Part shown: piece by piece, positions 7,865 to 52,140 of the stretch
Position numbering within the stretch: the stretch's first letter is position 1
Layout of the letters: each line of letters opens with the position of its first letter
Virus record (IMG/VR): IMGVR_UViG_3300028654_000384
Span: 62,001 to 126,000 of that record
Length of the DNA: 64,000 nt
Strand: one strand, 5' to 3'
Notes under the pieces: model-generated
The model's input: only the letters and a program-made list of their open reading frames with translations
What the model was told of the DNA's origin: nothing
The model's database searches: none
Program-made: the position numbers and the translations under genes

Positions 7865-10800
7865 ATGTCACGCGTTCCGAAGAAGTTTGTTGGTCTACAC
7901 GCTCATACAGGGTTTAGTCCCTTCGATGGACTTGGGTATCCGGATGAACACTTCATCTGGTGCATGGAAAACGGTTTGGACGCGCATACTATCACGGACC
8001 ATGGTAACTGCTCTGCTTATGCGCATGCCATGCTCTGGGCAGAAAAGTGGAACACTGAGCACAAAGACAAGCCCTTCAAGTATATTCCCGGCGTCGAGGC
8101 GTACTTTCATCCCGATTTGGCGCAATGGTCTCGAGATAAGGCCGCCGCTGATCAAGCCACCATCGACAAGGCCGCCGCCAAGAAGCTACGCACCAAGCTC
8201 GAGATCCTGCAGACCAAGCTCGTCGTCAATACTGACGGCGATGACGAGTCGGAGTCAATTGAAGTCTCCAACGCCCTCACGCTTGAGGACGAGTCAGAAT
8301 CGAAGAGCACCAAGCACTTCAATCCTGTCAATCGTCGGCATCACCTCGTGCTACTACCCAAGAACCCTGCTGGTCTACTGAAGATCTTCGGTCTGGTGTC
8401 GCAGAGCTATTTGACCGGATTTTACCGTTTCCCGAGGCTTGATGCCAAGATGCTGCGGGAAGCCTGTAAGGAAGGCAACATCATTGCCTCGTCTGCCTGC
8501 ATTGCGGGTCAGCCTGCATACAGCGTCTTTCAAGAGGTGCAGAAGCTGAAGTTCGACGACCTAAACCAGGCGTTGCTCGACGATCCTACCACACTGGAGA
8601 AGTGCATCACTGGTGTCGGTAACACTTACGACCTGATGACGTCGGTGCTGGGCGAAGGCAATTACTACCTCGAATTGCAGTTCAATAAACTACCCGCACA
8701 GAACCTCGTCAATCGAGCCATCATCGAGTTCGCTCGCCGAGCAGGCGTCACCAAGCAACTTATCGTCACCGCCGACTCCCACTATCCACGGCCAGAGCTG
8801 TGGAAAGAGCGCGAGCTGTACAAGAAGCTCGGCTGGATGAATGCGAAGGGAATCGACGCCGATTCGCTGCCCAAGTCGAGGGACGAGCTGAAGTGTGAGC
8901 TGTACCCGAAGAACGCATCGCAGGTGTGGGATGAGTACCTGCGCTCGAAGGTGGGGACGTCGTTCTATGATGACGATCTCGTCGCTGATGCAATTGAACG
9001 CACTCACGACATCGCCCACCAAGTCATCGGCCCGGTGCCGCCCGATCGGTCACCCAAGTTTCCGAATGAGCGGCTGATCCCGAAGGGCACCAAGTCGTTC
9101 GATCACCTCGTCAAACTGTGCAAGGAGGGCCTGACCAAGAGGGGATTGCAGGACAAGCCTGCCTACGTTGAGCGGTTGAAGGAGGAGCTGGGCGTCATCA
9201 AGGCGATGAAGAATGCCGACTATTTCGTGTCATACCAGAAAATCATGGAGTTGGCGCGAAAAGTGGTACTATGTGGGCCTGGGAGAGGCAGTGGTGGTGG
9301 AAGTCTCGTCGCCTACGTGCTCTACATCACTGACCTCGACCCGTTGAGGTGGGAGCTCCCATTTTCTCGCTTTCTCTCGATCTACAGGAAAGGTGCGCCG
9401 GACATCGACAGCGATCTCGCCGATCGCGACAAGGTGCTCGAGCAACTACGCAACTTCTTCGGCTTTGAGAACGTCGTCCCGATCAGCAACTACAACACCT
9501 TCAAGCTGAAGACGCTGGTCAAGGACATCGGCAAGTTCTACAGCGTGCCCTTCGAGGAGACCAATGCAGCAACAAGGACAGTGGAAGACGAAGTTCGCAA
9601 GGCAACGATGAAGGAAAGCGACGACAAGAACCTTTTCACACTGACTTTTGATGATGCGATGTTGTATAGCCCGTCGTTCAAGGCCTTCATCGACAAGTAC
9701 CCGCAGGTCGCCGAGAGCATCAAGATCCTGTTCAAGCAAAATCGTAGTTTAGGACGTCATGCTGGAGGTGTTCTCATAACTGATGACCTGCCTAACAAGA
9801 TGCCGCTGGTCGCTAGTCACGGTGAACCTCAATCGCCCTGGGTAGAAGGCGTGGGATTTAAACATTTAGAATATATTGGTGCGTTTCTTAAGTACGATCT
9901 CTTGGGTCTTGAAACTTTGCGCTATATCGAGCGCGCAATTGAGTTGATCCTGATCAAGGAAGGCAATCCCAAGCCCACCTTTCCCGACATCAAGGCGTGG
10001 TACGACGCCCACATGGCACCCGATGTCATTGACTTCAACGACCAGAAGGTCTACGAGGTCTATGCCGAAGGCAAGTGGTCGGGCATCTTTCAATGTACGG
10101 GTCAAGGCGCCCAACGCCTGTTCAAGAAGGCTAAGCCCAAGTCGATCATCGACATCGCCGCCTTGACGTCGATCTATCGTCCCGGCCCATTGGCCGCCCA
10201 CGTCGACAAGCTGTGGTTGGAGCACGAGCACACACCCTACGATTGGGGTCACCCGCTGATCAATGAGACACTGAAAGAAACGCGAGGATTGTTGGTTTTT
10301 CAGGAATCTGTGATGGCTCTCGTCAACAAGGTCGCCGGCTTTCCCATGGCCGAGACCGACGAAGTGCGCCGTGCCATCATGAAGCGCAGCATCTCGGGAG
10401 GTGAGGCCGCCAAGAAGAAGGTGAAGGAGCTCGAGGACAGCATTGTCTCCGGCGCGGTCAAGAACGGCGTGCCTGAAGCGACAGCTCGCAAGATGTACGA
10501 GACGATATGTTTCATGAGCGGCTATGGGTTCAATCGCGCCCACGCGTGTGGGTATAGCATTGTCTCGTACTGGTGCGCGTGGATGCTGACCCACCACGAG
10601 GAACAGTGGCTGTGCGCCTACCTCGAGGCGATGTCGACGACCCCCGACAAGCGCGCCAAGGCCTTCGGCGAGGTCAAGGCCCTGGGCTACCAGATCGTGC
10701 CCATCGACATCAACCACGCGCAGTTGGGGTGGACGGTGCTGCCCGGCAAGAAGCTGATGCCGTCGATGACGTCGGTCAAGGGGGTGGGTGACTCCGCCGT

Positions 10801-11566
10801 CGAGGAGATCATGTCGCAGCGTCCCTATGAGTCGATCGAGCAGATGCTGTGGAACGACGACGGTTCGTGGCGCCCCAGCAAGTTCAACCGTCGCGCCCTC
10901 GAGGCGCTGATCAAGGTACAGGCGCTCGACAGCGTGGGCTGTATCGGCCCCGACAAGGTCTTCAAGTCGTACCACCACATGCACGAGACGCTGATGGGTG
11001 AGTACGTTGAGACGGTGACCCGCAAGCGCAAGGGTGTCGAGGAGACCGTCGAGATCACCCGCGAGCACGCCGCGCTGATCAAGCGGTCGAACAAGGGCGA
11101 TCCCCACGAGGGCCGCAAGAACTTCTTCGAGCTGGCGCGGCGCCTGGCCGACACCCACGGTGACGAGTGGACGCGGAAGCAGCTCGCCGAGTTCAAGGCC
11201 GACTACTTCGGCACCGTCGACGTGATGACGATGTTTGACCCCAAGTACTTTGAGGCCTTCACCCGTAACGGTGTCGGGCCCATCGAAGACCTCGAGGTGG
11301 GCTCGACGGCGCTGTGTTGGTTGGTCACCACGCTGTCGGCACCAAAAAAGGGTGGGTCACCTGTCGCCGGCGTGATGAAGAAGACGAAGAATGGCAAGGC
11401 CTACCTGCAGGCCTTCGTCACCGGGCAGGTCGGCAAGCCCCTGCGGCTCAACGTGTGGGGCAAGAAGGAGCTGCTCGAACCTTATGTCCTCTATGCGGGT
11501 GAGGTGGAACGCAATGAGTTCGGCTTTTCAACTGCGGCCTTCAAGTTGAGGCTCATCGCCGGGTGA
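7865..11566 (+). CDS. dnaE: DNA polymerase III alpha subunit (family C)
   Basis: PHP motif LHAHT..S..DG, GRGSGGGSLVAYVL.ITD.DP, PDIDSD, GRHAGG, KYDLLGL, FQE, YGFNRAHA. Confidence 0.95.
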   Translation: MSRVPKKFVGLHAHTGFSPFDGLGYPDEHFIWCMENGLDAHTITDHGNCSAYAHAMLWAEKWNTEHKDKPFKYIPGVEAYFHPDLAQWSRDKAAADQATIDKAAAKKLRTKLEILQTKLVVNTDGDDESESIEVSNALTLEDESESKSTKHFNPVNRRHHLVLLPKNPAGLLKIFGLVSQSYLTGFYRFPRLDAKMLREACKEGNIIASSACIAGQPAYSVFQEVQKLKFDDLNQALLDDPTTLEKCITGVGNTYDLMTSVLGEGNYYLELQFNKLPAQNLVNRAIIEFARRAGVTKQLIVTADSHYPRPELWKERELYKKLGWMNAKGIDADSLPKSRDELKCELYPKNASQVWDEYLRSKVGTSFYDDDLVADAIERTHDIAHQVIGPVPPDRSPKFPNERLIPKGTKSFDHLVKLCKEGLTKRGLQDKPAYVERLKEELGVIKAMKNADYFVSYQKIMELARKVVLCGPGRGSGGGSLVAYVLYITDLDPLRWELPFSRFLSIYRKGAPDIDSDLADRDKVLEQLRNFFGFENVVPISNYNTFKLKTLVKDIGKFYSVPFEETNAATRTVEDEVRKATMKESDDKNLFTLTFDDAMLYSPSFKAFIDKYPQVAESIKILFKQNRSLGRHAGGVLITDDLPNKMPLVASHGEPQSPWVEGVGFKHLEYIGAFLKYDLLGLETLRYIERAIELILIKEGNPKPTFPDIKAWYDAHMAPDVIDFNDQKVYEVYAEGKWSGIFQCTGQGAQRLFKKAKPKSIIDIAALTSIYRPGPLAAHVDKLWLEHEHTPYDWGHPLINETLKETRGLLVFQESVMALVNKVAGFPMAETDEVRRAIMKRSISGGEAAKKKVKELEDSIVSGAVKNGVPEATARKMYETICFMSGYGFNRAHACGYSIVSYWCAWMLTHHEEQWLCAYLEAMSTTPDKRAKAFGEVKALGYQIVPIDINHAQLGWTVLPGKKLMPSMTSVKGVGDSAVEEIMSQRPYESIEQMLWNDDGSWRPSKFNRRALEALIKVQALDSVGCIGPDKVFKSYHHMHETLMGEYVETVTRKRKGVEETVEITREHAALIKRSNKGDPHEGRKNFFELARRLADTHGDEWTRKQLAEFKADYFGTVDVMTMFDPKYFEAFTRNGVGPIEDLEVGSTALCWLVTTLSAPKKGGSPVAGVMKKTKNGKAYLQAFVTGQVGKPLRLNVWGKKELLEPYVLYAGEVERNEFGFSTAAFKLRLIAG

Positions 11567-11593
11567 TGCGGGTGAATAATTAGGGTCAATTCC

Positions 11594-12091: not shown

Positions 12092-12671
12092 GCATAGGCC
12101 CGGCGCGCCGACCGAAGTGGGACTGGCCCGCTACATGACGAAGGACGAGCTGCGAGAGCTGGCCTTGGCAGCGTCGAAGGCGGCCGATGAACTCGAGGCG
12201 CGTCAATCGCCCATCACCGTCGTGGGATCACAGGTGCCTGCCAACGTGACGTTGGCACAGCACAACATTGACTACGTCAACAATCCCGGCATACAGGCCG
12301 GAGCGGCGAGCACCCTGCCACCCGGCGTGACGTTCGTGGTGCGGGACCCGGGCAAAGGTGGGCTGATGGGTGGCTTCACCGAGCGCGAGCTGACGATGTT
12401 GTCGTACTTGATGGCGTGGCTCGTCAAGTCGCCGGCGTCCGCCGGGCGGTTGGTTTCCGTCGCTACTGGAACACAAGATGACTCTACGTTGCTTCCGCTC
12501 CTCAAGGAGCTACAGGAGCTGATCACTACCACGGCGATCGAGCGCAATTTTGCATCCGATCGTGTCACACTGCGCGCCGCGGCGCTGACGTGGTTGGGCA
12601 ACCCACACGCTCGCAAGCATGTCATTGGGAGGTTGCTATTGACGGCACTCGACGCAGGGGAGGTGGGCTGA
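11970..12671 (+). CDS. Hypothetical protein
   Basis: ORF with AAGAGG ribosome site. Confidence 0.6.
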   Translation: MLIAFDTKFHKPKSPSGDEVTLALGPGTAMLTLRSDKFNVEHRPGAPTEVGLARYMTKDELRELALAASKAADELEARQSPITVVGSQVPANVTLAQHNIDYVNNPGIQAGAASTLPPGVTFVVRDPGKGGLMGGFTERELTMLSYLMAWLVKSPASAGRLVSVATGTQDDSTLLPLLKELQELITTTAIERNFASDRVTLRAAALTWLGNPHARKHVIGRLLLTALDAGEVG

Positions 12672-12751
12672 TGTGGCTCGCCGTCCTGATCGTGGTCGCG
12701 GTGTTTAGCATCGGCTTCATCCTTGGTCAAGCTCTGGAGAGGCGGTGATTC

Positions 12752-13699
12752 ATGTCACTGTGCGGAGGTTGTGGATCTACGTTTGACCCATGGTCATTGA
12801 GTGGAAAAGGTAGATTTGTAAGTCGATGGTGTCGATGTTGTGTTGATGGCACTAAACGTCGTCAAGTGTTTGATTGTTTAGGTTGTCATCAACACATTGA
12901 TCGTTGGGTTGAAGGTCTTTATACCTCACCAACTTTTTGTAATAAGTCATGTAGAATGAAGTATGAATATGCTAACAATATTAGGCGTAATTTTCTTAAT
13001 GATAAAACAACGTGGGAATGGTGGGTCAGTAAATACGGCGAAGAAGAAGCACTTCGTAGAAAAGAGCATCATCGCGACGCAACATCACTAGCTACGTCGG
13101 GAGAAAATAATCCGATGTATGGGCGTCATGATCATGTACACGGTTTGAAACGTTTTGCCAAAGAAAAGACTGGTAAAACACTTGAAGAAGTGCATGGCGT
13201 TGATCTAGCAAGGAAAATGCGCGAGAACAAGTCATTACATGCGCGTGGGTCAAATAATCCTGCGTATGGCAAGGTGTATACGAAAGGTGGAAAGAGCATT
13301 AAGGGTTACTACAAAGACAAGTTTTTTCGTAGTCTACTCGAGTATTCATTCATGAAACATCTTGAGAGTGAGGGGTTATCGCTTAACATTGATGTTGATT
13401 ATGAGTGCTTCATTGTTCCATATGTGTTCAATGGTGCTGATCGGACATATCGCGTTGATTTTTACGTGCCAAGTCGTCATGCAGTGTATGAAGTCAAACC
13501 TGCTTATGCTATGAAAGGTGTGACGCCCATCAATGAAGCAAAATGGAGTGCAGCACGTGTATACTTCAACCAACGCGGCATACAATTTTATGTAATGTCT
13601 GAGTTAGATTTTCCAAAGATCATGTTTGATATCGCGAGACAAGACAGCGATGTGACATGGAAAGAAGAGACGTTCAAGTATTTCAAGAGGTCAAAATGA
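12752..13699 (+). mobile_element. Free-standing homing endonuclease, TnsA-like PD-(D/E)XK domain with NUMOD-like repeats
   Basis: GENNPMYG, GSNNPAYG repeats; FRSLLE...YRVDFYV....YEVKP; strongly AT-rich. Confidence 0.75.
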
Positions 13700-14418
13700 T
13701 GCAACGAGTTATCATGTTTGTTGGGCCAGATCGTTGTGGCAAAACGCAAATTGCTCAAGCTCTTGCAAAAAAGATGGGTGCGATGTACTTCAAAGCATCG
13801 TGGGAACATGCCGCATATCAACAAAGCATAGGTCTTCGTCAAGGTCGAGATTTAGATCGGGGTGCAGTCGGTGCTAATCTTGATTTAGTGCGCCATCAAG
13901 TGCGCGAAATTGCTCGACAAGATGATATTGGATTTTGGGTTGCTGAGACAAAAGATAGTGATGGTAAACTCACTCGACAGACTCTTGAACCCAAGGCATT
14001 TACGAAAAAAGATCGATTTTTGAATGAATTACGGTTTGCCGATCCGCGTACATTTGATTTTGTGAAACAATTAGGAGAACAACTTGGAACAAGCGTTGTG
14101 TTTGATCGTGCATACCCTTGTGAAAGTGCGTATTCAACCGTAATGTGCCGTGAAACCGATCAATCAGCGCTTGAACAAATTGATCGTTGGTGGTCATCTC
14201 TTAATACTTTGATTATTGTGTGTCGTCGATCTAACTACAGTGGCATTACAGACGATCTTGATTCTTCAATCAATGGTGACGTACTTCAAAAACTTGATGA
14301 CGCATACATGGAATTTACCACGTGGACGCGGTGCTTCTTCAAAGAACTCAACGTCGACGATGAAGACCTCGACCGCGAAGTCAATGAGATCCTGCAGTTC
14401 ATCGGATGGGAGAAGTGA
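13696..14418 (+). CDS. dNMP (thymidylate-type) kinase with internal insertion
   Basis: P-loop GPDRCGKT, VVFDRAYPCE. Confidence 0.75.
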   Translation: MMQRVIMFVGPDRCGKTQIAQALAKKMGAMYFKASWEHAAYQQSIGLRQGRDLDRGAVGANLDLVRHQVREIARQDDIGFWVAETKDSDGKLTRQTLEPKAFTKKDRFLNELRFADPRTFDFVKQLGEQLGTSVVFDRAYPCESAYSTVMCRETDQSALEQIDRWWSSLNTLIIVCRRSNYSGITDDLDSSINGDVLQKLDDAYMEFTTWTRCFFKELNVDDEDLDREVNEILQFIGWEK

Positions 14419-14604
14419 GGTGATCCATGTGGCTCTATGACAGCGTGGCGAACGTGTGGCACATGTGGGCAATTGCCAGCCCAACGATCGGCACCAAGGC
14501 ATGGTGCGGCTTCGCTCTAACGGCAGATTGCACCCCCACGGGCGGCACCACCGGCATCCGCTGCGTATCGTGCAGTTACCTCTTCACCAAGTCGAGGCCC
14601 CAAC

Positions 14605-16983: not shown

Positions 16984-17030
16984 CGTAAATAGGGGTGTAG
17001 ATGGGCGTGTGCGGGAGTAAAATGAAGAGC

Positions 17031-18344
17031 ATGAAGCGACTACTGGTGACGACGCAGTTGAGCAACTTTGTCGACGGTAAAGCAGATCTCGCTTGCGATA
17101 GCGGGTGGCAAATGTGCATCAACCGCATCCGCGAGATGCTACGATTGAACCCCAACCTCTACGTCGACATCATGGGACCCAATGAGGATCAGTTGGTGCA
17201 GCACCCCGCCGACGTCAATCCTGATCTGGTTGCGATGTACGGCGAGATCGACGTGCCACGATTGCGGTACATTGAGCACCCAATCGTCACCAGCGCGCTG
17301 ATCACCCGCTATGACTTCAAGTGGTCGGAGATCGCCGACTCAATGGGCCTCGAGGAACACAAGGCTGATGTCACCCAGCGCTATGACGCCGTCTATGTGA
17401 ATGATCCCATGCAGCTCCGCGCCTTCAAGGCCATGTTCCACGTCGTCGGGGGCTACCAACCCAAGTTCTTCGTGCACTCACACTTCGTCGACGTCCCCGA
17501 GGTCCCCAAGTTCCCAGCCGAAGCGTCGCTGTGGCTGGGCCAGTGCGAGGCCACGCTGAAGGCTGACTACAACTTCTGGCAGTGCGAGTCGGCGATGAAC
17601 CAGTTCTTCGACAGCATGGGCAAGTGGTTCGTGCAGGACGTGGTCGACGACGTGCGGGCTAAATCGCAAGCGTCTGATGACGGGTATTCGATTGCGGAGA
17701 TCACTTCGCCCATATGCCAAGCTAATCTACGGTTTACGGACGCTGAGTGGCGTGCCAAGACTAATGGTAAGGTGGTACTGTTCTTTCCCAATCGCATTAG
17801 CCAGAGTTCAAGTGATTACACGCGTGGTTGGTGGTTCACACATGAGTTCATGCCCAAACTTCGACAACGTCGCCAAGACTATGTCGTGGTGTGCGGTAAT
17901 CCTAACATGAAGCTGTCGAATGATGAACTCGTTCAATTATGTGGGCCTCATGGTTATGTTAAGCTGCACGATCACACGTTCAATCGTGATGAGTATAAGT
18001 ACGTTGCGTCACACAGTGACATTGTCGTAGCGCTGTATGATGCCAAGAGTGACGCGTACGGTGGGACGGCCTCTCGAGAATGCATTGAATTGGGGTGTGT
18101 ACCATGCTGGCCTTCTTGCAATGAATATTTGAGCCTTGCTCGAGAAGCAAGAGTTGAACACCTATTGGCCAAGTCTGACTTGTCTGATTTAGTAGACGTC
18201 GCAGACAATCTCATTGGTCTTGCGGGTTCATCATCTTTGCCATTGAAACAGTACAATGAACGATTGCGTGAAGTTGTACGTAGGCGCTGTTCGTTTGAAC
18301 AGACTGTTCCCACAATGATGAAAAAGATGGGTCTACTATGCTAA
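17031..18344 (+). CDS. GT-B glycosyltransferase-like protein (candidate DNA glycosyltransferase)
   Basis: Two Rossmann-like halves, FPNRIS, DIVV...GGTASRECIELGCVP; start placed 7 nt after TAAAAT; near epimerase and hydroxymethylase. Confidence 0.55.
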   Translation: MKRLLVTTQLSNFVDGKADLACDSGWQMCINRIREMLRLNPNLYVDIMGPNEDQLVQHPADVNPDLVAMYGEIDVPRLRYIEHPIVTSALITRYDFKWSEIADSMGLEEHKADVTQRYDAVYVNDPMQLRAFKAMFHVVGGYQPKFFVHSHFVDVPEVPKFPAEASLWLGQCEATLKADYNFWQCESAMNQFFDSMGKWFVQDVVDDVRAKSQASDDGYSIAEITSPICQANLRFTDAEWRAKTNGKVVLFFPNRISQSSSDYTRGWWFTHEFMPKLRQRRQDYVVVCGNPNMKLSNDELVQLCGPHGYVKLHDHTFNRDEYKYVASHSDIVVALYDAKSDAYGGTASRECIELGCVPCWPSCNEYLSLAREARVEHLLAKSDLSDLVDVADNLIGLAGSSSLPLKQYNERLREVVRRRCSFEQTVPTMMKKMGLLC

Positions 18345-19363
18345 TTGAAGTTCTCGAAACATGGATCAAGACGCCTCGATACAAGAATCGTGGTAAACGA
18401 CGATTGTTAGCGATTGTTGCGTGTGATGCGTGCGGCAAACGTGAACAGCTACCATACATCAACGGAATGTGGGAGACTCGAAAACGCGTCTGTTCACCTG
18501 AGTGTGATACAAAACTACGATCTCGTGGTGGTGCGCTTTATGCAAGTATCACGGCGACGAACGTAGAGCGATATGGCGCAAAGTACGCATCAGCGACTGA
18601 TTTAGGAAAGCACAAACAGGAAGAGACAAATCTTAGAAAGTATGGATATAAGGCATCCTCACAATCACCTGAAGTTGAAGCTAAACGACTTAACACGTGT
18701 CTTTCTATGTATGGCGGACCTGCAGCAACAAGTGACGCGAACGTCAGAGCGAAAGTCAAGTTGACGTGTGATACCAAGTTTGGTGGTGGTGTGTTGCTCG
18801 ATGATGATATTCGAGAGCAATTCAACGCAACTATGGTAGAACGACATGGTGCACCGTGGGCAGCACAATCAGCAATCATTCTCGCTAAACAACATCAGAC
18901 CAACATTGAACGTTATGGAGTTGCGTTTCCATTCCACACAGATGAAGCGAAGTCAAGAGCACACTCACCCCAAGCGCTACTCAAACGCCATGAGACCATG
19001 AAGCGTAATGGCACATACAGGACTTCAAAGCCTGAAGACCGTCTCTATCAAGTTCTGTGTGAGATGTTTGATATAGACGACGTCGACCGCCAGACGCTCG
19101 TATACAAGTGGCCAATTGACTTCTACGCCAAGAGCATTGACACCTACGTACAGTACGACAGTTATTGGCATGGCGTCGGACGCGCAATCATTGAGGTCGC
19201 TGAACACAAGGTGCCTCGAGACGTCTCGATTCACAAGAAGATGCTGACTGACATCGCTCAGGATGCGTACTTCGCCGAACGTGGCATGCGGCTCATTCGT
19301 GTGCAGAGCCTGACGCCTGAACAGATTACCCCCGCGGCCATGCGTCGCATGGGCCTGCTGTGA
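18338..19363 (+). mobile_element. Free-standing homing endonuclease, Vsr/DUF559-like C-terminal domain
   Basis: Repeated TN.E(R/K)YG units; TSKPEDRLY, IDFY, YDSYWHG, D.Y....G.RLIRV; AT-rich. Confidence 0.7.
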
Positions 19364-26009: not shown

Positions 26010-26566
26010 AGAAGACATTCGAGGAAGCATGGGCCGAGAAGGAGAAACAGGGCTACCAGTACGGCGCCGACGCCCTGGAGCAGGTTCGCATGGGATGGGA
26101 GCTGCACGAAGGTGCTGATGAGCCCAAGGTCGGTCGATCACCTTGGCCTACGCGGTGGATGAATGTCGCTCGCTTGCTAGCCAGTGAGTGTTCTTATGAC
26201 CCAAGACTGAAGGTCTGTGCAATCATGGTGCCCGAGGACAATACGGGAATCATGGCTTTTGGGTACAATGGGAATGCGAAGGGCATGCCCAATGAAGTCG
26301 AGTCACTTGTTCCCGGCCAATCAGGTGCGATTCACGCTGAACAAAATTGCCTCATTAAGGCACCATTCCACTTTCCACTCAAGAAACACATGTACATCAC
26401 CCACAGTTCATGCAGGGCCTGTGCCAAGCTCCTGATCAACGCCAACGTGTCGCGCGTGGTCTATGGAGAGCTGTACCGCGACGCGTCGGGCCTCGACCTG
26501 CTGCGAGCAGCGGGAATAGAGGTTTACTCCGAGGCAGAAGCCGTGGCCCTTACGGCACGGGCGTGA
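26006..26566 (+). CDS. dCMP deaminase
   Basis: GYNG, HAEQN, C..CAKL. Confidence 0.85.
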   Translation: MKKTFEEAWAEKEKQGYQYGADALEQVRMGWELHEGADEPKVGRSPWPTRWMNVARLLASECSYDPRLKVCAIMVPEDNTGIMAFGYNGNAKGMPNEVESLVPGQSGAIHAEQNCLIKAPFHFPLKKHMYITHSSCRACAKLLINANVSRVVYGELYRDASGLDLLRAAGIEVYSEAEAVALTARA

Positions 26567-26579: not shown

Positions 26580-26891
26580 GTGATGAAGAAGCTACAGGAA
26601 GTCGACGTCATTCGCATCATGCGCGAGGAATGGTCAGCGAAGGTCAAGACCCTTGCCGAGGAGGTTGACGTCGTCATGAACTCCAAGGTGAAGGATGGTA
26701 GCACGGTGGGGGTGCTCTCGCCGGGATTAAAGATAAAACATAAACAAAGTGGGATTTTGTACACCGTCATGTCCGTCGGCCCACGTGATGTGCTGATCAG
26801 GCCGCCCGATGGAGACCCAAATGGATCAATTAGTGACACTGCGATGCTCGTCGATGCTGCTGAGCTAGAGCAGTCCTACAAGCTTGACTGA
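26580..26891 (+). CDS. Hypothetical protein with tag-like N-terminus
   Basis: VIRIMREEW; TACTTA at 26567. Confidence 0.7.
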   Translation: MMKKLQEVDVIRIMREEWSAKVKTLAEEVDVVMNSKVKDGSTVGVLSPGLKIKHKQSGILYTVMSVGPRDVLIRPPDGDPNGSISDTAMLVDAAELEQSYKLD

Positions 26892-26910
26892 AATTGGGAG
26901 ATCAATACGA

Positions 26911-27639
26911 ATGGCACAGCACGATAAAGAAGACCAGTTGACCGATCTCCTCAAGGGCGTCGACATCAAGGGCATCGTCAATGGCGCGTTGCAGAAGGGT
27001 GGTGCTGTCGCTGCCCCCATCGACGAGGCCTACGTGGCGCAGCCCAAGCCCTACTCGCAGGTGACGGAGTTCGTGTCCCAGAAGACGAAGGACGCCCACA
27101 CGTCGCTGTACCAGAAGTACGTCGAGACGTTGAACCGGGTGTCTGCTGAACTCGACACTGCTTCGAAGTCGGAAGCCAACAGCAACCACTCCGACTTCAG
27201 GAGCCTGAAGCTTGATGAGACGCGGTTGCTGAACGCGGTTTGGCTACATGAACTTTACTTCGCCAACTGCTTTGACGTTCATAGTGAGTGCTACATGAAT
27301 TCCATGGCGTACATCCGCCTGGAACGTGACTTCGGCACCTTTGAGGACGCACAGCAGGACATGATGGCATGTGCGCTGGCCTGCGGTGAGGGCTGGATGA
27401 TCACCGCCTACAACATGTTCCTCAAACGCTACGTCAACGTCATGGTCACCGACAACAGCCACGACGTGATGTTGGGGCTGTACCCGATCATCGTCATCGA
27501 CATGCATGCTCACGCGTACTTCAAGGACTACCTGACTGACAAGAAGAGCTACCTCGTAGCGATGATGCGCCAGCTCAACTGGAACGTCATCGAAGAGCGG
27601 TTCACCAAGGCTGAATCGATTGCCGAGGTGGTCAAGTGA
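26911..27639 (+). CDS. Fe/Mn superoxide dismutase-like protein with N-terminal extension
   Basis: AH..LY..Y, LHELYF, FGTFE, GEGW, IDMHAHAYF.DY, NW..IE.RF. Confidence 0.8.
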   Translation: MAQHDKEDQLTDLLKGVDIKGIVNGALQKGGAVAAPIDEAYVAQPKPYSQVTEFVSQKTKDAHTSLYQKYVETLNRVSAELDTASKSEANSNHSDFRSLKLDETRLLNAVWLHELYFANCFDVHSECYMNSMAYIRLERDFGTFEDAQQDMMACALACGEGWMITAYNMFLKRYVNVMVTDNSHDVMLGLYPIIVIDMHAHAYFKDYLTDKKSYLVAMMRQLNWNVIEERFTKAESIAEVVK

Positions 27640-42444: not shown

Positions 42445-43976
42445 GTGCCGATATTGAGTGGGATAAATCGGTGATCTTGAACGCTGACAATGAACATCTC
42501 CTTGCTTTGCCAGTCATGTCGTTCATCAAGGGATTGGTCGAGCGGTACGGCGCTAGCGTTGACACGTGTCTCGATGCCCGCAAGCACCGCAGCATCGTTG
42601 ACTGCGACTTCGCTCGTTCACCCGAGGAGCTCGACTCATCATGGCGTGCGGCACCCCCACCTGCCGACCTCATCGATCGCCGCGTCGAGATCACCGGGCC
42701 GCCCACCCGCAAGGGCGTCATCAATGCTCTCAATTCGGGCGCTGACGTCTTCATGGCCGACTTTGAGGACTCATGCTCACCGACGTGGGACAACCTGATC
42801 AGTGGTCAGGTCAATCTCTTCAATGCCGTTCGTCGCACCATTACCTACGACGATCCTACGACGGGCAAACACTACTCGCTCAATGACAAGCCAGCGGTGT
42901 TGATGGTCAGGCCCCGGGGCTGGCACCTCAAGGAGAAGCACGTCAGGCTCGATGGCAAGCCCGTGCCTGCGGCCCTGGTCGACTTCGGTCTCTATGTCTT
43001 CAACAATGCACACGAACTGTTGTCACGTGGGTCAGGCCCGTATCTGTACCTGCCCAAGATGGAGAGTCACCACGAGGCGAAGCTGTGGGACGATGTCTGT
43101 TCCTACGCAGAGCAGGTACTCAACCTGCCCATGGGCGCCATTCGCACGACGTGCCTGATCGAGACGCTGCCTGCCGCCTTCTGTATGGACCGCATCATCT
43201 ACGCCCTCCGCGACCGCATCGTGGGCCTCAACTGCGGGCGCTGGGACTACATCTTCTCCTTCATCAAGAAGCGCCACGATGACCCGAGCGCGGTGTTACC
43301 CGATCGCTCGCTGTTGACGATGGACAAGGCATTCCTCAACGCCTACGATGAGCTGTTGGTGCAGACGTGCCACAAGCGCGGCATCCACGCGATGGGCGGC
43401 ATGGCGGCGCAGATCCCGATCAAGGGCAATGCCGAGGCCAATGACGTCGCCATGGAGAAGGTACACACCGACAAGTTGCGTGAAGCAGCGATGGGCCACG
43501 ACGGCACTTGGGTCGCCCACCCGGGTCTGATCCAGATCGCTCGTGAGGCCTTCAAGGACTGCGGGCCCAATCAGATCGATCGGCCACGCACCAATCGACC
43601 CATCACTCGCGACGAGCTGTTGTTGGTGCCGTCAGGTCCCTGCACCGAGGAAGGCCTGCGCCACAACATCAGGGTTGGCATCCAATACCTCGAGGCGTGG
43701 TTGAGCGGCAATGGCTGCGTGCCCCTGTACAACCTGATGGAGGACGCGGCGACGGCCGAGATCTCACGTGCCCAAATATGGCAGCAACTACACCACGGTG
43801 CGATCGTCGGCGGGCGCCCACTGACCTACGTCAGGTTGGCGGACATCATCAGCCAAGAAACAATGCCACTGGTGGGCGCGCGGATCGACGATGCGATCAG
43901 GTTGTTCATGAAGGTTGCATGCGACCCGCACGAGTTCACCGACTTTCTGACGCTGCCCGCCTACGACATGCTGTAA
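42441..43976 (+). CDS. aceB: Malate synthase A
   Basis: RRVEITGP, NALNSGADVFMADFEDS, VRPRGWHL, YLPKMES, LIETLPA, GLNCGRWDY, MGGMAA, GHDGTWVAHP, LMEDAATAEISRAQ. Confidence 0.95.
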   Translation: MSADIEWDKSVILNADNEHLLALPVMSFIKGLVERYGASVDTCLDARKHRSIVDCDFARSPEELDSSWRAAPPPADLIDRRVEITGPPTRKGVINALNSGADVFMADFEDSCSPTWDNLISGQVNLFNAVRRTITYDDPTTGKHYSLNDKPAVLMVRPRGWHLKEKHVRLDGKPVPAALVDFGLYVFNNAHELLSRGSGPYLYLPKMESHHEAKLWDDVCSYAEQVLNLPMGAIRTTCLIETLPAAFCMDRIIYALRDRIVGLNCGRWDYIFSFIKKRHDDPSAVLPDRSLLTMDKAFLNAYDELLVQTCHKRGIHAMGGMAAQIPIKGNAEANDVAMEKVHTDKLREAAMGHDGTWVAHPGLIQIAREAFKDCGPNQIDRPRTNRPITRDELLLVPSGPCTEEGLRHNIRVGIQYLEAWLSGNGCVPLYNLMEDAATAEISRAQIWQQLHHGAIVGGRPLTYVRLADIISQETMPLVGARIDDAIRLFMKVACDPHEFTDFLTLPAYDML

Positions 43977-43991
43977 ACAGAGAGGTGCGAC

Positions 43992-45374
43992 ATGGATGAC
44001 ATCAAACGACCCTACACTCCCGCTGACGTCAAGCGCCTGCAGGGCCGCACCCGAATCGTACACTCGCTGGCCGAGAATGGTGCCGGTCGATTACGTGCTA
44101 TGATGGTGAACCAATCCGTGCGGGCGTTGGGAGCGCAGACTGGCAACCAAGCGGTGCAGATGGTCAAGGCAGGATTGAAAGCCATATATGCGTCAGGTTG
44201 GCAAGTTGCCGCCGACGCCAACACGTCAGGCCAGACCTACCCAGATCAGTCACTGTACCCCGTCGACAGCGTGCCCACCCTGGTCAGGCGCATCAACAAT
44301 GCACTGCTCCGTGCCGAGCAGATCGATGCGATGGAAGAGGCAGATGGCCAACGCAGCGAGAATCATCGTCACTGGTTAGCGCCCATCGTTGCAGATGCTG
44401 AGGCAGGCTTTGGCGGTCACCTCAACACCTATGAACTTGTCAAGGCGTTGATCGAGGCCGGTGCGGCAGGCATTCACCTCGAGGATCAGCTGTCGAGCGC
44501 GAAAAAATGCGGGCATTTAAATGGGAAAGTGCTCATCCCGACGTCTCAAGCGATCAACAACCTCGTCGCCGCCCGCCTCGCTGCCGACGTGCTCGAGGTG
44601 CCGACGGTCATCATTGCTCGCACCGATGCACTGAGTGCGCAATTGATAACCAGTGATATTGACGAACGAGATCGCCAGTTCGTTGCACCAACTAGTCGCA
44701 CTTCGGAAGGTTTCTACCACCTGACGGGCGATCCCATGCAGCGGACGATCGCTCGTGGCCTCGCCTATGCGCCCTACGCCGACCTGCTGTGGTTCGAGAC
44801 GTCAACGCCCGATTTGGCGCAAGCCAAGCAATTCGCTGAGGCGATCCACGCACAGTTCCCGGGCAAGCAGTTGGCCTTCAATTGTTCGCCGTCGTTCAAG
44901 TGGCGCAAGCACCTGACGGACGATCAGATCGCCTCGTTTCAGGATGACCTACACGCGATGGGTTATGTCTTCCTCTTTGTAACCCTCGCGGGTTGGCACG
45001 CCAATGCCAGCAGCGTCTTCGAACTGGCGCTCGATTATCACCAGCGTGGCATGGGTGCCTACGTCAAGTTGCAGGATCGGGAATTCACGCTCGAACAAGC
45101 GGGCTACACCGCCGTCAAGCACCAGCGCGAAGCCGGCACCTCATACTTCGACGCGATCGTTAGTGTCATCACCGGCGGTACTTCGTCGACGTTAGCGATG
45201 AAGGGCTCGACTGAGGCCGAGCAGTTCTCTGAACATGCAACCCCGTACGGGGTAGGATTACCCTATGGCGAAGAAGTCGAAGAAGAAGCGGGAAAAGACG
45301 GTGGTGTGCACGGATGTCGGGCAAGCGAAGTTCGCGCCCCAGCAGACGTACGCCCTGACGCTGACCCGGTTTGA
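43992..45374 (+). CDS. aceA: Isocitrate lyase
   Basis: [72 protein letters not shown]. Confidence 0.95.
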
Positions 45375-46298
45375 GGTCCTCCACCTACGCGACCTGTTTA
45401 GCATCACGTTGCCCACCGACGTCAAGCAGACGGTGAGCCAGGGATTGGCCGCCGTCGAGGATCGAGAGATCGTCGAAGCCAAGCTGTGGCGCAAGGTCGC
45501 CACCTTGTGTCAAGCGGCGGCAGTGCCGACTGACGATGCGGCCCCTGACTTCGTCTGCGCGGCGTCGCAGGCACCCCCGGTCGGCGTCTTCAGGCTGGCG
45601 CACGATCCGCAGGAGGGTCAGGAGAATCAGTCACCAACCGGGAGCGTGTTGGATAACATCGTGACCGGTGATGAGAACGTTGATGATCCGGGTGACGACG
45701 ACCCGTTCATGGGCGCCACGCCGTCATGGCCCACCGGTGAACCGATCGGACAACGTACACCAAAGAAGGCGAAGCAGCCGTGACCGCCTACAAGATCGGC
45801 CAGCTGATCTATGTGGTTCTTCGTGGCCAGAACACGGTGTACCCGATGATGATCACCGAGGTCATCAGCAAGCAGACGATGGAAGGTGACAGCATCACCT
45901 ACATGGTCGCCGGGGGTTCAGGTACGGGCGCGCAGGTACTGCCGATCGACAAGGTAGACGGTGAGATCTTCACGTCGGCGGCCGAAGTCAAGCGGATGTT
46001 ACTCGAGCGGGCGACCAACGGCATCAACCAGCTGGTCAACAACGCCGTCACTAAGGCGAAGGAGTGGTACCCGACTGCAACAGAAGCGACGACTGAGGGG
46101 TGGAAGTCCAATACTGAACCTCCTCACAAGAGCATCCATGCGCCTGGGCCGCAGATCAAGGCGCGAGGTGCCAAGTCGACCAAGGCGCGCGAAGAAGTGC
46201 CGCCCGTGACTGAAGAATTACCCGTCGATGGTGATGGCGTCACAGTGCAGATGCCCGACGGCACTGTCGCCCGCGTCAAGCTACCCGCCTCGATGTGA
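45265..46298 (+). CDS. Two hypothetical proteins (45265-45783, 45780-46298)
   Basis: ORF track; TAGGAT 6 nt before ATG 45265. Confidence 0.7.
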
Positions 46299-47283: not shown

Positions 47284-47285
47284 AC

Positions 47286-47702: not shown

Positions 47703-47789
47703 GGGTGCAAAAGTGCGGTGGTGTGAGGTAGGATGGTCACATGGCATTATTGTTCACCAGCTGCCGACGGTGTGATAGAGTAGTACTCG

Positions 47790-49332
47790 ATGGCCACCAA
47801 GCTGCTCTTCACCCAGGTATATCACGGATTCGAGGCCTTTGCCGACTACTTTCGTGACGTGCACGAAGCAGTCGATGCCGACTTCAACCCGGCGATGAAG
47901 GACATCCCGGGCGAGTTTCAAGGCAAGGTCACCGTCACAATCACCTACGAACCTGAGGACGACAACACATGAGCGCGAAGCTGTCAACGGAGAAACTGAA
48001 GGAATTGATCGGCACCTGGCTGGCGACCGATGCGGCCCGACATGACCTGAAGCACCACTCCGACCTCGACAATCCCGACGAGATGACGGTGGATTGGGCC
48101 AATGGCGACGTTGAAGTGACGCGGCTACAATACGTGTGCCGACTGTACGGTGCACCACTCGACTCAACGTTGGTGCAGCTCGAGGAGTTCATCTGGCACA
48201 TGTGGTGCGATGGTTCGCAGTGGAAGCGCTGTGAGAAGCGCCAGTTGAAGGACGAGGCCGAGGACACCTTCACACAGGTGGAGTACATCGGCGAGTGGAA
48301 AAAGGGTCTGCCTGGCAACCAGCAGGCACGTCGCACTGTCGAATCGTTCCCGTGCGACCTGATGGGCGAGCACAACCCGGAGCTGGTCACCAAGTTCTTC
48401 AATGACCTGAAAGCGGCACAGAAGTGCATCTATCGCACGTTCGTGCCCAACAACCAGCTCGCCGACAACTACCGTCTCGAAGTGATCACCACACCCGATG
48501 ACACTGAAGTCGTGGGCTGGTGGGTGACGGTGGACTGACATGAGTAAGCAACGCTTTGAAGAACAGGTCGGCATTGAGCTGACGCGCTGTGGCAAGGTGA
48601 TGCCGCTCGGTGGCAACCTGTCACTGCGTGGTGCTGCAGGCGCGACCGAGACGCGGTTGGGTTATGAGTGCAGCAAGTGCTTCCGTCGAGTTGCCGTCGT
48701 CAATTGCTGGCCTCCACCGGGCAACACTATCTACTTGAACGATGAGGAGCCGTGATGACCGATCGCTTCACCTGGGACTCCGACGGCGTCCTCAACTATG
48801 CCTTCACCGGCGCGGCACTTGACGAACAATGGTCACGTGAATTGTCACAGATGCATCACTTGTCGTACGATGAGGGCGGTGCCGTCAAGTTCCTGAAGGC
48901 GCGCCTGGGCAGGCAGAAGTTCTGTTGGCAGGGGTCATCTGTTCGCAATTGGGTCTGGGAGGGCGACGATTGGCGTGCCTTCGCCTCGACCCGCGGCGTC
49001 TCGTTCGAGGTACGCACGGGCTCGACGGTTGAACAGGCCTTCGCTGCGTGGCAGGACTTCAAGCGAAAGGTGGGACTAACATGATTCACTATAGGTCAGG
49101 TGACGTACCCATGGTCGGCGATCGGGTGATGATTTCGCCCGAGTCGCCACGCGTTCGAACAGGACGAAGGGCAGCAAAGAGCGAAGGCACCGTAACACAA
49201 TTGGGTTGTGACTTGTGTGATCCGATGCCAGACTTAGTCTTCGTCGATTGGGACGATGAGATTGGGTCGACAATGCCGACAAGCGACACCATGTTGAGTG
49301 ATCTGATTCTAGTGAAGAGAGGTTCAACATGA
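47790..49332 (+). CDS. Cluster of five small hypothetical ORFs (47790, 47969, 48540, 48752, 49081)
   Basis: ORF track with coupled overlaps. Confidence 0.6.
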
Positions 49333-50165: not shown

Positions 50166-50198
50166 CGTCGAGCCCACCTACCCTCAACGGAGTGGACG

Positions 50199-50338: not shown

Positions 50339-50343
50339 TACTT

Positions 50344-50703: not shown

Positions 50704-50768
50704 TGGACACGTTTACTTCTGACCTCTGACGCGCTCGGCGGGCCTACATATCGCAGGAGGTGTGTCCC

Positions 50769-51254: not shown

Positions 51255-51301
51255 TCGGCCTATTTCGGCCTGAGGTCTTCAGACTGAGGGTATTTAGCGG
51301 C

Positions 51302-51553: not shown

Positions 51554-52140
51554 GGACGTCAGCTGCAGGCATACAATTTATAACGCATGAAGAAGGCGTC
51601 GTGCTCCACACTTACAATGATGTCGGTGGGAAAGCAACGATCGGAATTGGCCACCTGCTCGGCCCGGGTGAGTCGTATCCCAACGGCATCACCCTTGCAC
51701 AGGCACAGGCCATGCTCGCGAACGACCTTGCCCGGTTCGAGGCCGCCATCAGCGGCGGCGTCAAGGTGACGATCACCCAACACATGTTCGACGCGCTCGC
51801 CAGCTTTACGTACAACCTGGGCACCGGCGCACTCGCCTCCTCTACACTCCTCAAGCTCCTCAACAAGGGTGACTTCGCCGGTGCGGCCGCCCAATTTCCG
51901 GCCTGGGACAAGGTCGACGGCGTGCCCAATGCCGAGATCCTCGGCCGGCGCAAGCGTGAAGCTGCACTGTTCTTGACCCCCGATGCGGCCCACGTCGCTC
52001 CCCCGCCCGCGCCGCCTGTTCCCACCCCTCCCGTGCCGCCGAGTATTCCTGCGGTCCCCGTGGCGCCTCCACCCGCGCCCACCAATGCATTCGCCGACTT
52101 CTTTGCGATGATCTTGAGACTGTTCACCGGAGGCAAGTGA
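51550..52140 (+). CDS. GH24 phage lysozyme (endolysin) with Pro-rich tail
   Basis: HEEG....YND.GGK.TIGIGH, FDALASF.YNLG, RRKREAALF. Confidence 0.9.
   Translation: MRTSAAGIQFITHEEGVVLHTYNDVGGKATIGIGHLLGPGESYPNGITLAQAQAMLANDLARFEAAISGGVKVTITQHMFDALASFTYNLGTGALASSTLLKLLNKGDFAGAAAQFPAWDKVDGVPNAEILGRRKREAALFLTPDAAHVAPPPAPPVPTPPVPPSIPAVPVAPPPAPTNAFADFFAMILRLFTGGK

What the first reader, a model, noticed from the sequence alone, without database searches (positions are those of the whole stretch)
9250..51655. Short A/T-rich recoded patches centred on enzyme active sites
Seen: GC-rich genes switch abruptly to A/T-ending codons (tta, ata, cta, gga, aaa) at catalytic motifs. Examples: dnaE GRGSGGGS (~9250-9310), GRHAGG to KYDLLGL (~9735-9925), FQE (~10265-10320) and GFNRAH (~10500-10565); hydroxymethylase RSQD..KND (~21670-21722); deaminase HAE (~26190-26400); SOD HELYF (~27240-27300); nitrilase KHNL (~31995-32045); ICL KKCGH (~44500-44535); lysozyme HEEG (~51570-51655). 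Established: homing endonucleases target conserved coding motifs and repair copies flanking donor sequence; the FNKSH region is a known DnaE intein site. Inference: these are scars of repeated endonuclease attack repaired from AT-richer relatives, or synonymous escape recoding. This would record phage-phage conflict across the genome.
Basis: partly seen in the sequence, partly recalled or inferred. Interest (0 to 1): 0.62.

Follow-up and report, generated by a model that had tools for sequence, protein, structure and literature searches.

The report
AT-rich codon patches in phage DnaE
Only two of the ten claimed A/T-rich patches, both in the phage's DNA polymerase gene, are statistically robust internal patches; they lie on or beside sites where relatives carry selfish endonuclease or intein insertions, so they may be scars of that conflict, but no genome-wide link between such patches and enzyme active sites exists.

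Summary
The window is part of a 215.9-kb rhizosphere jumbo-phage contig (GC 57.5%). A/T-ending synonymous codons do cluster more than chance: 51 of 273 genes at p<=0.05, against 13.7 expected.

The clustering has ordinary sources:
- a 5'-end effect, with AT3 1.24-1.40x the expected value in the first 15 codons;
- A/T-rich tracts flanking the genome's own A/T-rich homing-endonuclease genes (8 of 8 neighbouring gene ends);
- a few internal patches.

Of the ten claimed patches, three pass a synonymous-shuffle test. These are DnaE 9737-9916, DnaE 9257-9304, and the lysozyme patch, which is simply the gene's first codons.

Across 81 genes and 22,797 codons, A/T-ending codons are not enriched at conserved residues (z = -2.1; smoothed r = -0.03).

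The two DnaE patches are real, specific to this lineage and identical in independent assemblies. Patch 1 is centred on a split-intein/endonuclease insertion site (G475|S476). Patch 2 ends about 10 codons before the commonest gene-splitting site (~residue 700), which the two closest relatives occupy with a GIY-YIG endonuclease.

Endonuclease-linked gene conversion or resistance is the best reading for DnaE only. No donor sequence was found.

The parts
7865..11566 (+). Uninterrupted DnaE-type DNA polymerase III alpha gene (1233 aa)
   Evidence: Translation; colinear with unsplit relatives; aligns to Taq and E. coli Pol III alpha structures.
9737..9925 (+). Patch 2: main A/T-rich synonymous patch, residues ~625-687, covering GRHAGG through KYDLLGL (third catalytic Asp motif). 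It ends about 10 codons before insertion site ~700 (window ~9962).
   Evidence: Score 22.2 against null 5.7+-1.2. GC3 0.43 against 0.73 for the rest of residues 31-699, the lowest of 87 alleles. Synonymous codon identity to the closest relative 0.25 against 0.54, p=0.0012. Sharp left edge at 9738. Private residues T639, G664, A673, Y687 are unique among 80 relatives and 119 protein clusters.
9257..9304 (+). Patch 1: A/T-rich patch over GPGRGSGGGS, residues 465-480, centred on the split-intein insertion point G475|S476 (window 9289|9290).
   Evidence: Score 10.6, z about 4. Relatives carry IntN ...GPGRG|CFTPETRV and IntC ...VHN|SGGGS with an Endo-I-like endonuclease gene between them. The window is the only one of 81 alleles with AGA...AGT...AGT at R474/S476/S480.
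10274..10318 (+). Weak A/T run over ETRG|LLVFQES, centred on intein site ~808
   Evidence: Not significant as a gene-wide maximum (5.5). Local excess +0.75 per codon. Synonymous identity to L158 0.11, p=0.03. Intein N-halves ...|CLTGDT sit at this point in P0029 and P0052.
10547..10597 (+). Cluster of window-private amino-acid substitutions (C895, G896, V900, M907, H911) just after the GFN(K/R)(S/A)H intein site 892. It is not A/T-rich.
   Evidence: Split-intein N-halves at GFNKS| in L086, P0034, P0065, P0113 and L158.
7886..7948 (+). N-terminal A/T-rich patch of DnaE (codons 8-28)
   Evidence: Score 11.4. It fits the genome-wide 5'-end effect.
12752..13699 (+). A/T-rich free-standing homing-endonuclease-like gene (TnsA/Endo-I-like PD-(D/E)xK domain plus NUMOD3), 1.2 kb downstream of DnaE
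   Evidence: Pfam and PHROGs. Remote similarity (25% over 190 aa, E=0.065) to the endonuclease sitting in the DnaE 475/476 split intein of L155.
18338..19363 (+). A/T-rich homing endonuclease gene (DUF7487 / phrog_3339)
18072..18338 (+). A/T-rich 3' tract of gene 17001-18344 abutting that endonuclease gene; used as the positive control for co-conversion
   Evidence: Score 30.5 against 8.5+-2.1. GC3 falls from about 0.8 to 0.4 over the last ~180 codons. Orthologues in G001 and G002, which lack the endonuclease, are flat. G004, with a different endonuclease at the same spot, also dips.
51559..51594 (+). Lysozyme patch, codons 4-15 of the gene
   Evidence: Score 9.0. Explained by the 5'-end A/T3 excess of 1.24-1.40x. 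The family's catalytic Glu happens to lie near the N-terminus.
26887..26931 (+). SOD N-terminal patch. The claimed HELYF patch at 27238-27255 is marginal.
4403..4462 (+).
   Evidence: Score 11.0, z 4.2; conservation 0.80 in the patch against 0.41 in the rest of the gene. No insertion at this point in the L155 orthologue.

Best explanation
The window belongs to a GC-rich (57.5%) rhizosphere jumbo phage. Its genome carries at least seven A/T-rich free-standing homing-endonuclease genes, and its relatives range from 34 to 62% GC.

Clusters of A/T-ending synonymous codons are real, but they have three separate causes:
1. A general 5'-end effect in the first ~15 codons of genes. This explains the lysozyme patch and the N-terminal SOD and DnaE patches.
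2. Tracts of 200-500 nt in host genes that abut resident endonuclease genes. These are best read as donor sequence co-converted with the endonuclease from A/T-richer relatives.
3. A few internal patches.

There is no general tendency for such patches to sit on conserved or catalytic motifs.

The exception is DnaE. In this phage family DnaE is broken at eight or more sites by split inteins with free-standing endonucleases, or by GIY-YIG endonucleases.

The window's DnaE is uninterrupted, but it carries two lineage-specific patches. In both, synonymous sites, and in patch 2 several otherwise invariant residues, have diverged from every known relative. One patch is centred on the G475|S476 intein site. 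The other lies immediately upstream of the ~700 splitting site, which its two closest relatives occupy with one endonuclease family.

Inferred mechanism: the homing site was cleaved during co-infection and repaired from an A/T-richer, unsampled relative. Either the conversion tract stopped short of the endonuclease gene, or the element was lost later. What remains is a diverged allele that is probably resistant to cleavage.

Shown here: the patches, their statistics, their lineage specificity, and the insertion sites in relatives. Inferred: the cleavage, the donor and the resistance.

The confidence given (0.55) is for the whole account. The decomposition into ordinary causes and the failure of the genome-wide rule I hold at about 0.85. 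The endonuclease-linked origin of the two DnaE patches I hold at about 0.45.
For: Clustering genome-wide: 51 of 273 genes at p<=0.05 against 13.7 expected.

5'-end effect: A/T3 1.40x, 1.27x and 1.24x the expected value in codons 1-5, 6-10 and 11-15.

Resident endonuclease genes are identified.
- All 8 neighbouring gene ends have lower GC3 in the 60 codons nearest the endonuclease.
- The 17001-18344 tract matches endonuclease presence or absence across four relatives.

DnaE patches:
- Scores 22.2 and 10.6 against a null of 5.7+-1.2.
- Absent at these positions from 27 relatives with GC3>=0.5.
- Identical in independent assemblies from many samples.
- Synonymous identity to the closest relative 0.25 against 0.54, p=0.0012.
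- Private substitutions clustered at 639-691 and 895-911.
- Serine TCN-to-AGY family switches at 4 of 5 positions inside the patches against 5 of 23 outside, p=0.026.

Insertion sites in relatives.
- Alleles split at ~700 have an A/T-enriched upstream flank (mean delta GC3 -0.065 against +0.003, MWU p=0.018).
- The window is the extreme at -0.30; none of 79 unsplit alleles is as low.
- The site-700 endonucleases of L008 and L158 are homologous (49% identity).
- The 705-892 block has two deep allele classes bounded by sites 700 and 892.
Against: - No donor. The best nucleotide identity to patch 2 (residues 618-692) is 0.68-0.71, and 0.57-0.70 for patch 1, no better than the flanks and no better for A/T-rich relatives. 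An exact 23-mer of patch 2 occurs only in the same phage. No protein among 5.8 billion shares the private residues as a set.
- Pooled over all eight insertion sites the A/T excess is not significant: p=0.06-0.15 against random positions and 0.23-0.34 against conservation-matched positions. Sites 213, 516, 744, 892 and 927 show little or none.
- With eight sites in 1232 residues, a 75-codon patch lies near some site by chance more often than not.
- Patch 2 stops about 10 codons short of site 700 and does not span it.
- L008's own DnaE shows no significant A/T patch next to its endonuclease.
- Relatives are at most 83% identical in protein, so synonymous sites are near saturation and no event can be dated.
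- In a gene with GC3 0.75, any accelerated synonymous turnover looks like A/T enrichment. The A/T shift alone therefore does not prove an A/T-rich donor.
Confidence: 0.55

Rival explanations
1. Ordinary homologous recombination, with no endonuclease involved, imported short tracts from an A/T-richer relative. Such tracts would land in conserved regions because that is where diverged phages share enough identity to recombine.
For: Relatives of widely different GC co-occur in similar habitats. Seven of nine internal patches not adjacent to an endonuclease gene lie in above-average conserved segments. The epimerase patch at 4403-4462 has no insertion in the one orthologue examined. Patch 2's left edge follows a 26-nt run identical to the closest relative.
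Against: No high-identity recombinant tract to any sampled relative anywhere in the genome: nothing reaches 85% identity over more than about 100 nt. This reading does not explain why alleles split at 700 share the upstream A/T shift, or why patch 1 is centred exactly on an intein insertion point.
Confidence: 0.22
2. Recoding in place. Repeated endonuclease attack selected point mutations, synonymous and conservative, in the homing sites, giving a resistant allele without any foreign donor. A variant of this is mutagenic break repair with a GC-to-AT bias.
For: Both patches are unlike every known relative. The private residues are unique. Patch 1 is the size of a typical endonuclease recognition site, and its changes concentrate within +-10 nt of the insertion point. 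Random synonymous change in a GC3-rich gene lowers GC3.
Against: Four serine TCN-to-AGY switches need non-synonymous intermediates or double hits at highly conserved serines, which suggests long divergence elsewhere. Patch 2 (~190 nt) is far larger than a recognition site.
Confidence: 0.15
3. The patches are functional features of the mRNA or of translation, such as slow codons for co-translational folding of the palm domain, or a local relaxation of RNA structure.
For: The 5'-end effect shows that selection on codon composition operates in this genome. The patches lie at domain-core motifs.
Against: None of 27 GC3-rich relatives has a patch at these positions. Genome-wide, conserved residues use slightly fewer A/T-ending codons than expected. 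No promoter, terminator or repeat is found in the patch. This reading does not explain the private amino-acid changes.
Confidence: 0.07
4. Assembly chimera: a metagenome assembler stitched a relative's sequence into the conserved region.
For: The contig comes from a metagenome, and conserved motifs are where assembly graphs can cross.
Against: IMG/VR contigs from other samples are 100% identical across the patch. Several separately assembled runs hold all sampled 31-mers, and single-run contigs cover 9736-9929 and 9810-10064 without any difference.
Confidence: 0.02

Closest known systems
Co-conversion of flanking markers and localized marker exclusion by free-standing homing endonucleases of T4-like phages (SegB, SegG, mobE; PMC2330249, PMC2790892, review PMC2988022)
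   Same: Free-standing GIY-YIG, HNH and PD-(D/E)xK endonuclease genes sit between or inside essential genes. Cleavage of a competitor's allele is repaired from the endonuclease-carrying genome, which copies flanking donor sequence. Here the host-gene ends next to all seven resident endonuclease genes are compositionally foreign.
   Different: Nothing was shown experimentally here. The DnaE patches have no endonuclease gene beside them and no identified donor. The signal is compositional (A/T-rich tracts in a GC-rich genome) rather than a genetic cross.
Nuclease genes at boundaries of genetic exchange between phages (ICP1 phages; PMC10448857)
   Same: Endonuclease positions coincide with switches in relatedness. 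In DnaE the 705-892 block has two deep allele classes bounded by site ~700 and intein site 892.
   Different: A different phage group and much deeper divergence. The boundaries here rest on 8 relatives, not on population samples.
Fractured genes: split inteins with a free-standing endonuclease between the halves (Dassa et al. 2009, PMC2677866), which included three DnaE loci at different integration points
   Same: Relatives L004, L077, L078 and L155 show exactly this arrangement: IntN, an endonuclease ORF, then IntC ending HN|S or HN|C.
   Different: The window's own DnaE is intact, so it is not itself a fractured gene. One endonuclease (L155) is Endo-I/TnsA-like rather than Vsr-like. Many alleles are split at ~700 with a 46-aa tail that lacks a Cys/Ser first residue.
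5'-end codon bias: A/T-rich, weakly structured starts of bacterial and phage genes (established knowledge, not read here)
   Same: A/T3 is 1.24-1.40x the expected value in the first 15 codons of 273 genes. This accounts for the lysozyme, SOD and DnaE N-terminal patches.
   Different: It does not explain the internal patches.
Intron-encoded endonuclease used in competition between jumbo phages (PhiPA3 against PhiKZ; PMC11620839; abstract only read)
   Different: That case is intron-encoded and demonstrated experimentally. I read only its abstract, so I do not know which gene it cuts. Here only sequence footprints exist.

Membership tests
Homing-endonuclease co-conversion tract (DnaE patches) | An endonuclease gene, intron or intein adjoins the tract in the same genome | tested here: not met
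   The window's DnaE is one continuous 1233-aa ORF. The nearest endonuclease-like gene is 1.2 kb downstream, at 12752-13699.
Homing-endonuclease co-conversion tract (DnaE patches) | The tract lies at a site used by homing elements in related genomes | tested here: met
   Patch 1 is centred on G475|S476. Patch 2 ends ~10 codons before site ~700, which is split in about 30 of the 120 listed protein clusters and in the two closest relatives. The pooled association over all eight sites is not significant.
Homing-endonuclease co-conversion tract (DnaE patches) | The tract is phylogenetically discordant and traceable to a donor lineage | tested here: inconclusive
   Synonymous divergence is elevated against all relatives and the private residues are unique, but no donor was found.
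Homing-endonuclease co-conversion tract (DnaE patches) | The endonuclease cuts the naive allele within or near the tract, and the converted allele is resistant | not testable with these tools
   Needs cleavage assays.
Homing-endonuclease co-conversion tract (tracts beside resident endonuclease genes, e.g. 18072-18338) | A foreign-composition tract abuts the endonuclease gene and is absent from relatives that lack the endonuclease | tested here: met
   8 of 8 flanks; G001 and G002 lack the endonuclease and are flat; G004 has one and dips.
5'-end codon bias | The patch lies within the first ~15-30 codons, and the genome shows the effect in general | tested here: met
   Lysozyme patch at codons 4-15, SOD at codons 2-16, DnaE at codons 8-28. 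Genome-wide excess 1.24-1.40x.
   A/T3 is 0.241 at conserved residues against a shuffle expectation of 0.248+-0.003, z=-2.1. Smoothed correlation r=-0.026 against a null of 0.002+-0.026. DnaE alone gives r=0.31, z=2.25.
Fractured gene / intein-containing DnaE | Intein blocks or a split ORF in the window's own gene | tested here: not met
   The gene is colinear with unsplit relatives and has no extra residues at any of the eight sites.

The most novel reading that the evidence does not exclude
The intact DnaE of this phage is a survivor allele. Its patches at G475|S476, upstream of ~700, and perhaps at ~808 and 892-911 would be cleavage-resistant versions of the homing sites of several different endonucleases that have fractured the same gene in its closest relatives. 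Synonymous recoding, together with a few tolerated substitutions in catalytic motifs, would then be a readable signature of immunity to homing elements in an essential polymerase.
Probability: 0.25. Interest if true: 0.65.

Novelty: new member of a known kind. Interest (0 to 1): 0.4.

Why it matters
If the DnaE patches are endonuclease scars or resistance alleles, compositional patches could be used to find past homing events and likely cleavage sites in metagenomic phage genomes that no longer carry the element. They would also offer natural resistant/sensitive target pairs for several uncharacterised endonucleases.

The negative result matters as much. Short runs of rare codons at catalytic motifs are mostly chance or 5'-end effects. 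They should not be read as conflict scars without a shuffle test.

Tried and rejected
- DNA search of DnaE against 50,697 phage records found no match. The protein-mode search found only relatives below 31% identity.
- An exact 23-mer from patch 2 searched in IMG/VR found only the same phage.
- Rfam on the interrupted relatives L008, L004 and L017 found no group I or II intron, so those insertions are free-standing endonuclease genes or split inteins.
- A promoter, terminator and repeat scan of 9100-10200 found nothing.
- Laying contigs from four rhizosphere runs showed no variant allele; the low word shares were low coverage.
- A search for recent recombinant tracts (blastn of the whole genome against four relatives' genomes and all loci) found nothing at 85% identity or more over more than about 100 nt (after an over-strict first attempt). 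The apparent 98% identity to L003 at residues 541-560 is therefore shared GC-ending codon bias at conserved residues, not recombination.
- ICL was not found in four relatives, so its patch could not be compared.
- The longer epimerase orthologue of L155 has its extra length at the N-terminus, not as an insertion at the YxxxK patch.
- A first list of nine insertion sites included two BLAST artefacts (764, 870). It was corrected to eight sites after reading the junction sequences.
- The site-700 endonuclease has only a catalytic-domain homologue in this genome, at genome 50834-51139. A self-immunity explanation for patch 2 therefore has no direct support. The window's 12752-13699 endonuclease is only remotely like the 475/476 one.
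- Structure prediction, complex prediction and the large representative-protein search were not used; they would not have borne on the question.

Full report
**Setting.** The window is bases 62001-126000 of a single 215,857-bp contig with GC 57.5%. It is classed as a linear virus record about 63% complete. It is found at 100% identity in several rhizosphere metagenomes. No phage in the 50,697-record collection resembles it at the DNA level. IMG/VR and metagenome scans gave about 100 loci encoding DnaE relatives, the closest at 67-83% protein identity. These relatives range from 34 to 62% GC. I fetched four relatives' genomes whole (G001-G004).

**Checking the observation.**
- Method: I called 273 genes with a simple codon-usage caller. 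I scored each codon as log(A/T-rich usage / genome usage), found maximal-scoring segments, and compared them with 200 within-gene shuffles of synonymous codons. These shuffles keep the protein sequence and the gene's codon usage.
- Clustering is real genome-wide: 51 genes at p<=0.05 against 13.7 expected.
- Only three of the ten named patches stand out: DnaE 9737-9916 (22.2 against 5.7+-1.2), DnaE 9257-9304 (10.6) and lysozyme 51559-51594 (9.0 against 4.6+-1.1).
- ICL 44502-44528 and SOD 27238-27255 are marginal.
- DnaE 10274-10318 and 10500-10565, the hydroxymethylase, the deaminase and the nitrilase are within chance.

**Where the clustering comes from.**
- By hand count, about 20 of the 38 genes with p<=0.02 have their top patch in the first ~30 codons.
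- Genome-wide, A/T3 is 1.40x, 1.27x and 1.24x the value expected from the amino acids in codons 1-5, 6-10 and 11-15, and falls to 1.0 by codon 30. The lysozyme patch covers codons 4-15. Its overlap with the catalytic Glu is a coincidence of that family's architecture.
- The strongest patches in the genome (scores 30-46) abut A/T-rich ORFs. Pfam and PHROGs identify five of these ORFs as homing-endonuclease-like: window 12752-13699, window 18338-19363, and genome 34173-35081, 36150-37082 and 188605-189240. Two GIY-YIG genes, at genome 9151-9876 and 137776-138639, have flanks with smaller GC3 drops.
- In all 8 neighbouring genes, the 60 codons nearest the endonuclease have lower GC3 than the rest of the gene.
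- For gene 17001-18344, GC3 falls from about 0.8 to 0.4 over the last ~180 codons. The orthologues in G001 and G002 lack the endonuclease and are flat. G004 has a different, GIY-YIG-like ORF at the same place and also dips.
- This is the expected picture for co-conversion of flanking sequence with an endonuclease gene that came from A/T-richer relatives (PMC2330249, PMC2790892, PMC2988022).

**The general claim fails.** I used 81 genes with orthologues in at least two of the four relatives (22,797 codons, first 25 codons excluded).
- A/T3 is 0.241 at residues identical in all relatives and 0.243 at variable residues.
- Synonymous shuffling within each amino acid predicts 0.248+-0.003 for conserved residues, giving z=-2.1.
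- A 15-codon smoothed correlation between A/T excess and conservation gives r=-0.026 against a circular-shift null of 0.002+-0.026.
- Among 11 internal significant patches, 8 are more conserved than the rest of their gene, but three are much less conserved and the weighted means are 0.48 against 0.43.
DnaE alone shows a positive correlation (r=0.31, z=2.25).

**DnaE in relatives.** The family is heavily colonised. Reading junction sequences gave eight insertion sites, numbered in window residues:
- ~213: split intein plus a Vsr-like endonuclease (L004, L077, L078).
- 475/476: IntN GPGRG|CFTPETRV, an Endo-I-like endonuclease, then IntC ...VHN|SGGGS (L155, P0007 and others).
- 515/516: ...HN|TD.
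- ~700: split in about 30 of the 120 listed protein clusters. A homologous GIY-YIG endonuclease sits there in L008 and L158 (49% identity). The N-pieces carry a conserved 46-aa tail.
- 743/744.
- ~808: |CLTGDT, just before LLVFQE.
- 892: GFNKS|.
- 922-933: GIY-YIG (L016-18).

No intron model matched. The split-intein arrangement is the 'fractured gene' of Dassa et al. 2009, who already listed three DnaE loci (PMC2677866).

**The two DnaE patches.**
- They are lineage-specific: none of 27 relatives with GC3>=0.5 has a significant A/T patch at 465-480 or 625-684.
- They are not an assembly artefact.
- Against the closest relative L158 (83% protein identity over 1-700, GC3 0.79), synonymous codon identity is 0.25 in 625-692 (n=59) against 0.54 elsewhere (block permutation p=0.0012). 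It is 0.11 at 804-818 (p=0.03). At 465-480 it is 0.33, which is not significant.
- The left edge of patch 2 is sharp, at 9738, after a 26-nt run identical to L158.
- The window has 23 private substitutions at positions invariant in eight close relatives. Ten of them fall in two clusters, 639-691 and 895-911. T639, G664, A673, Y687, C895 and G896 occur in none of 80 aligned relatives. The set T639/G664/A673/L675/Y687/A691 occurs in none of 119 other protein clusters from a search of 5.8 billion proteins restricted to residues 610-700.
- Conserved serines switch from TCN to AGY at 4 of 5 positions inside the patches against 5 of 23 outside (p=0.026). The AGA...AGT...AGT combination around G475|S476 is unique among 81 alleles.
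- Alleles split at ~700 have a lower GC3 in 618-692 than in the rest of their N-piece (mean -0.065, n=7). Unsplit alleles do not (+0.003, n=79; one-sided Mann-Whitney p=0.018). The window, at -0.30, is beyond all 79 unsplit alleles.
- The 705-892 block has two deep allele classes, and their boundaries fall at sites ~700 and 892. This matches the observation that nuclease genes mark boundaries of exchange (PMC10448857).

**Limits.**
- Pooled over the eight sites, the local A/T excess is not significant. Only sites 476 (+0.82 per codon) and 808 (+0.75) are strong. The six intein sites pooled give p=0.014-0.016 against random positions but only 0.10-0.12 against conservation-matched positions.
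- With eight sites in 1232 residues, proximity of a long patch to some site is expected by chance.
- No donor was found. A/T-rich relatives are no closer to the patches than GC-rich ones.
- No recent recombinant tract to any sampled relative exists anywhere in the genome.
- Patch 2 does not span site 700.
- In a gene with GC3 0.75, any fast synonymous turnover lowers GC3.
- The relatives are too distant to date anything.
- My gene calls are home-made, and some start codons may be wrong.

**Conclusion.** Endonuclease-linked conversion is well supported for the tracts beside the genome's own endonuclease genes. It is the best, but unproven, reading for the two DnaE patches (about 0.45 for that step). 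Its rivals are endonuclease-independent recombination (0.22), recoding in place under endonuclease pressure (0.15), a translational function (0.07) and assembly error (0.02). The remaining examples are chance runs or the 5'-end effect.

Noticed in passing
L008:5098-5244; proteins P0003, P0004, P0016, P0044, P0056, P0070, P0093 (last ~46 residues): DnaE N-pieces that end at residue ~700 carry a conserved ~46-aa tail (GGIVELDVDGV..KL.DG.....L..GDD.V.P.E). It looks Hint-like but lacks a Cys/Ser first residue. It may be a degenerate intein half or a docking domain that holds the two polymerase pieces together.
   Followed up: partly
L159:3594-4021; L160:3654-4537: Some alleles are split at ~700 with no full-size endonuclease gene between the pieces, only small ORFs. 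The split appears to persist after the endonuclease is lost.
   Followed up: no
L158:5001-11344: The closest relative's DnaE is in three pieces. It is split at ~700 by a GIY-YIG-type endonuclease gene, and at 892 by a split intein with a second intervening ORF (9393-10211).
   Followed up: partly
window 43992-45374: An isocitrate lyase gene in a phage. No homologue was found in four relatives' genomes, and its GC3 (0.67) is below the genome norm, so it may be a recent acquisition. Nearby auxiliary genes include Fe/Mn SOD, a CN hydrolase, dCMP deaminase and a thymidylate-synthase-family enzyme.
   Followed up: partly
window 111401-114690 (genome 173401-176690; L025:1521-4219): The largest A/T-rich island (GC 0.41) holds two ORFs of 580 and 319 aa with no Pfam or PHROG match. 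The upstream gene's 3' end has the highest patch score in the genome (46.4).
   Followed up: partly
window 13657-14418: An A/T-rich ORF with weak AAA/P-loop matches lies directly after the endonuclease-like gene 12752-13699, inside the same A/T-rich island (12661-14470).
   Followed up: no
genome 6035-9115 and 9963-13013 (L150): Two ~1020-aa tail-sheath paralogues are separated by a GIY-YIG+NUMOD1 endonuclease gene at genome 9151-9876.
   Followed up: no
genome 41788-43212 (DnaB-like helicase) and 43349-45856 (ribonucleotide reductase large subunit): Relatives carry 1.65-kb (G004, at residue ~213) and 1.7-kb (G003, at residue ~593) insertions in these genes. The window's genome shows no significant A/T patch at either point.
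   Followed up: partly
L006:3001-6690 (G003, classed as provirus): The DnaE reading frame of this relative contains two in-frame stops, although it aligns end to end. The cause could be sequencing error, a pseudogene or an alternative code; I did not examine it.
   Followed up: no
genome 47858-48181 (ThyX gene 47777-48688; L023): A long A/T-rich patch (score 21.6, residues 27-134) lies in the flavin-dependent thymidylate synthase gene and is more conserved than the rest of that gene (0.62 against 0.45). Its cause is unexplained.
   Followed up: no
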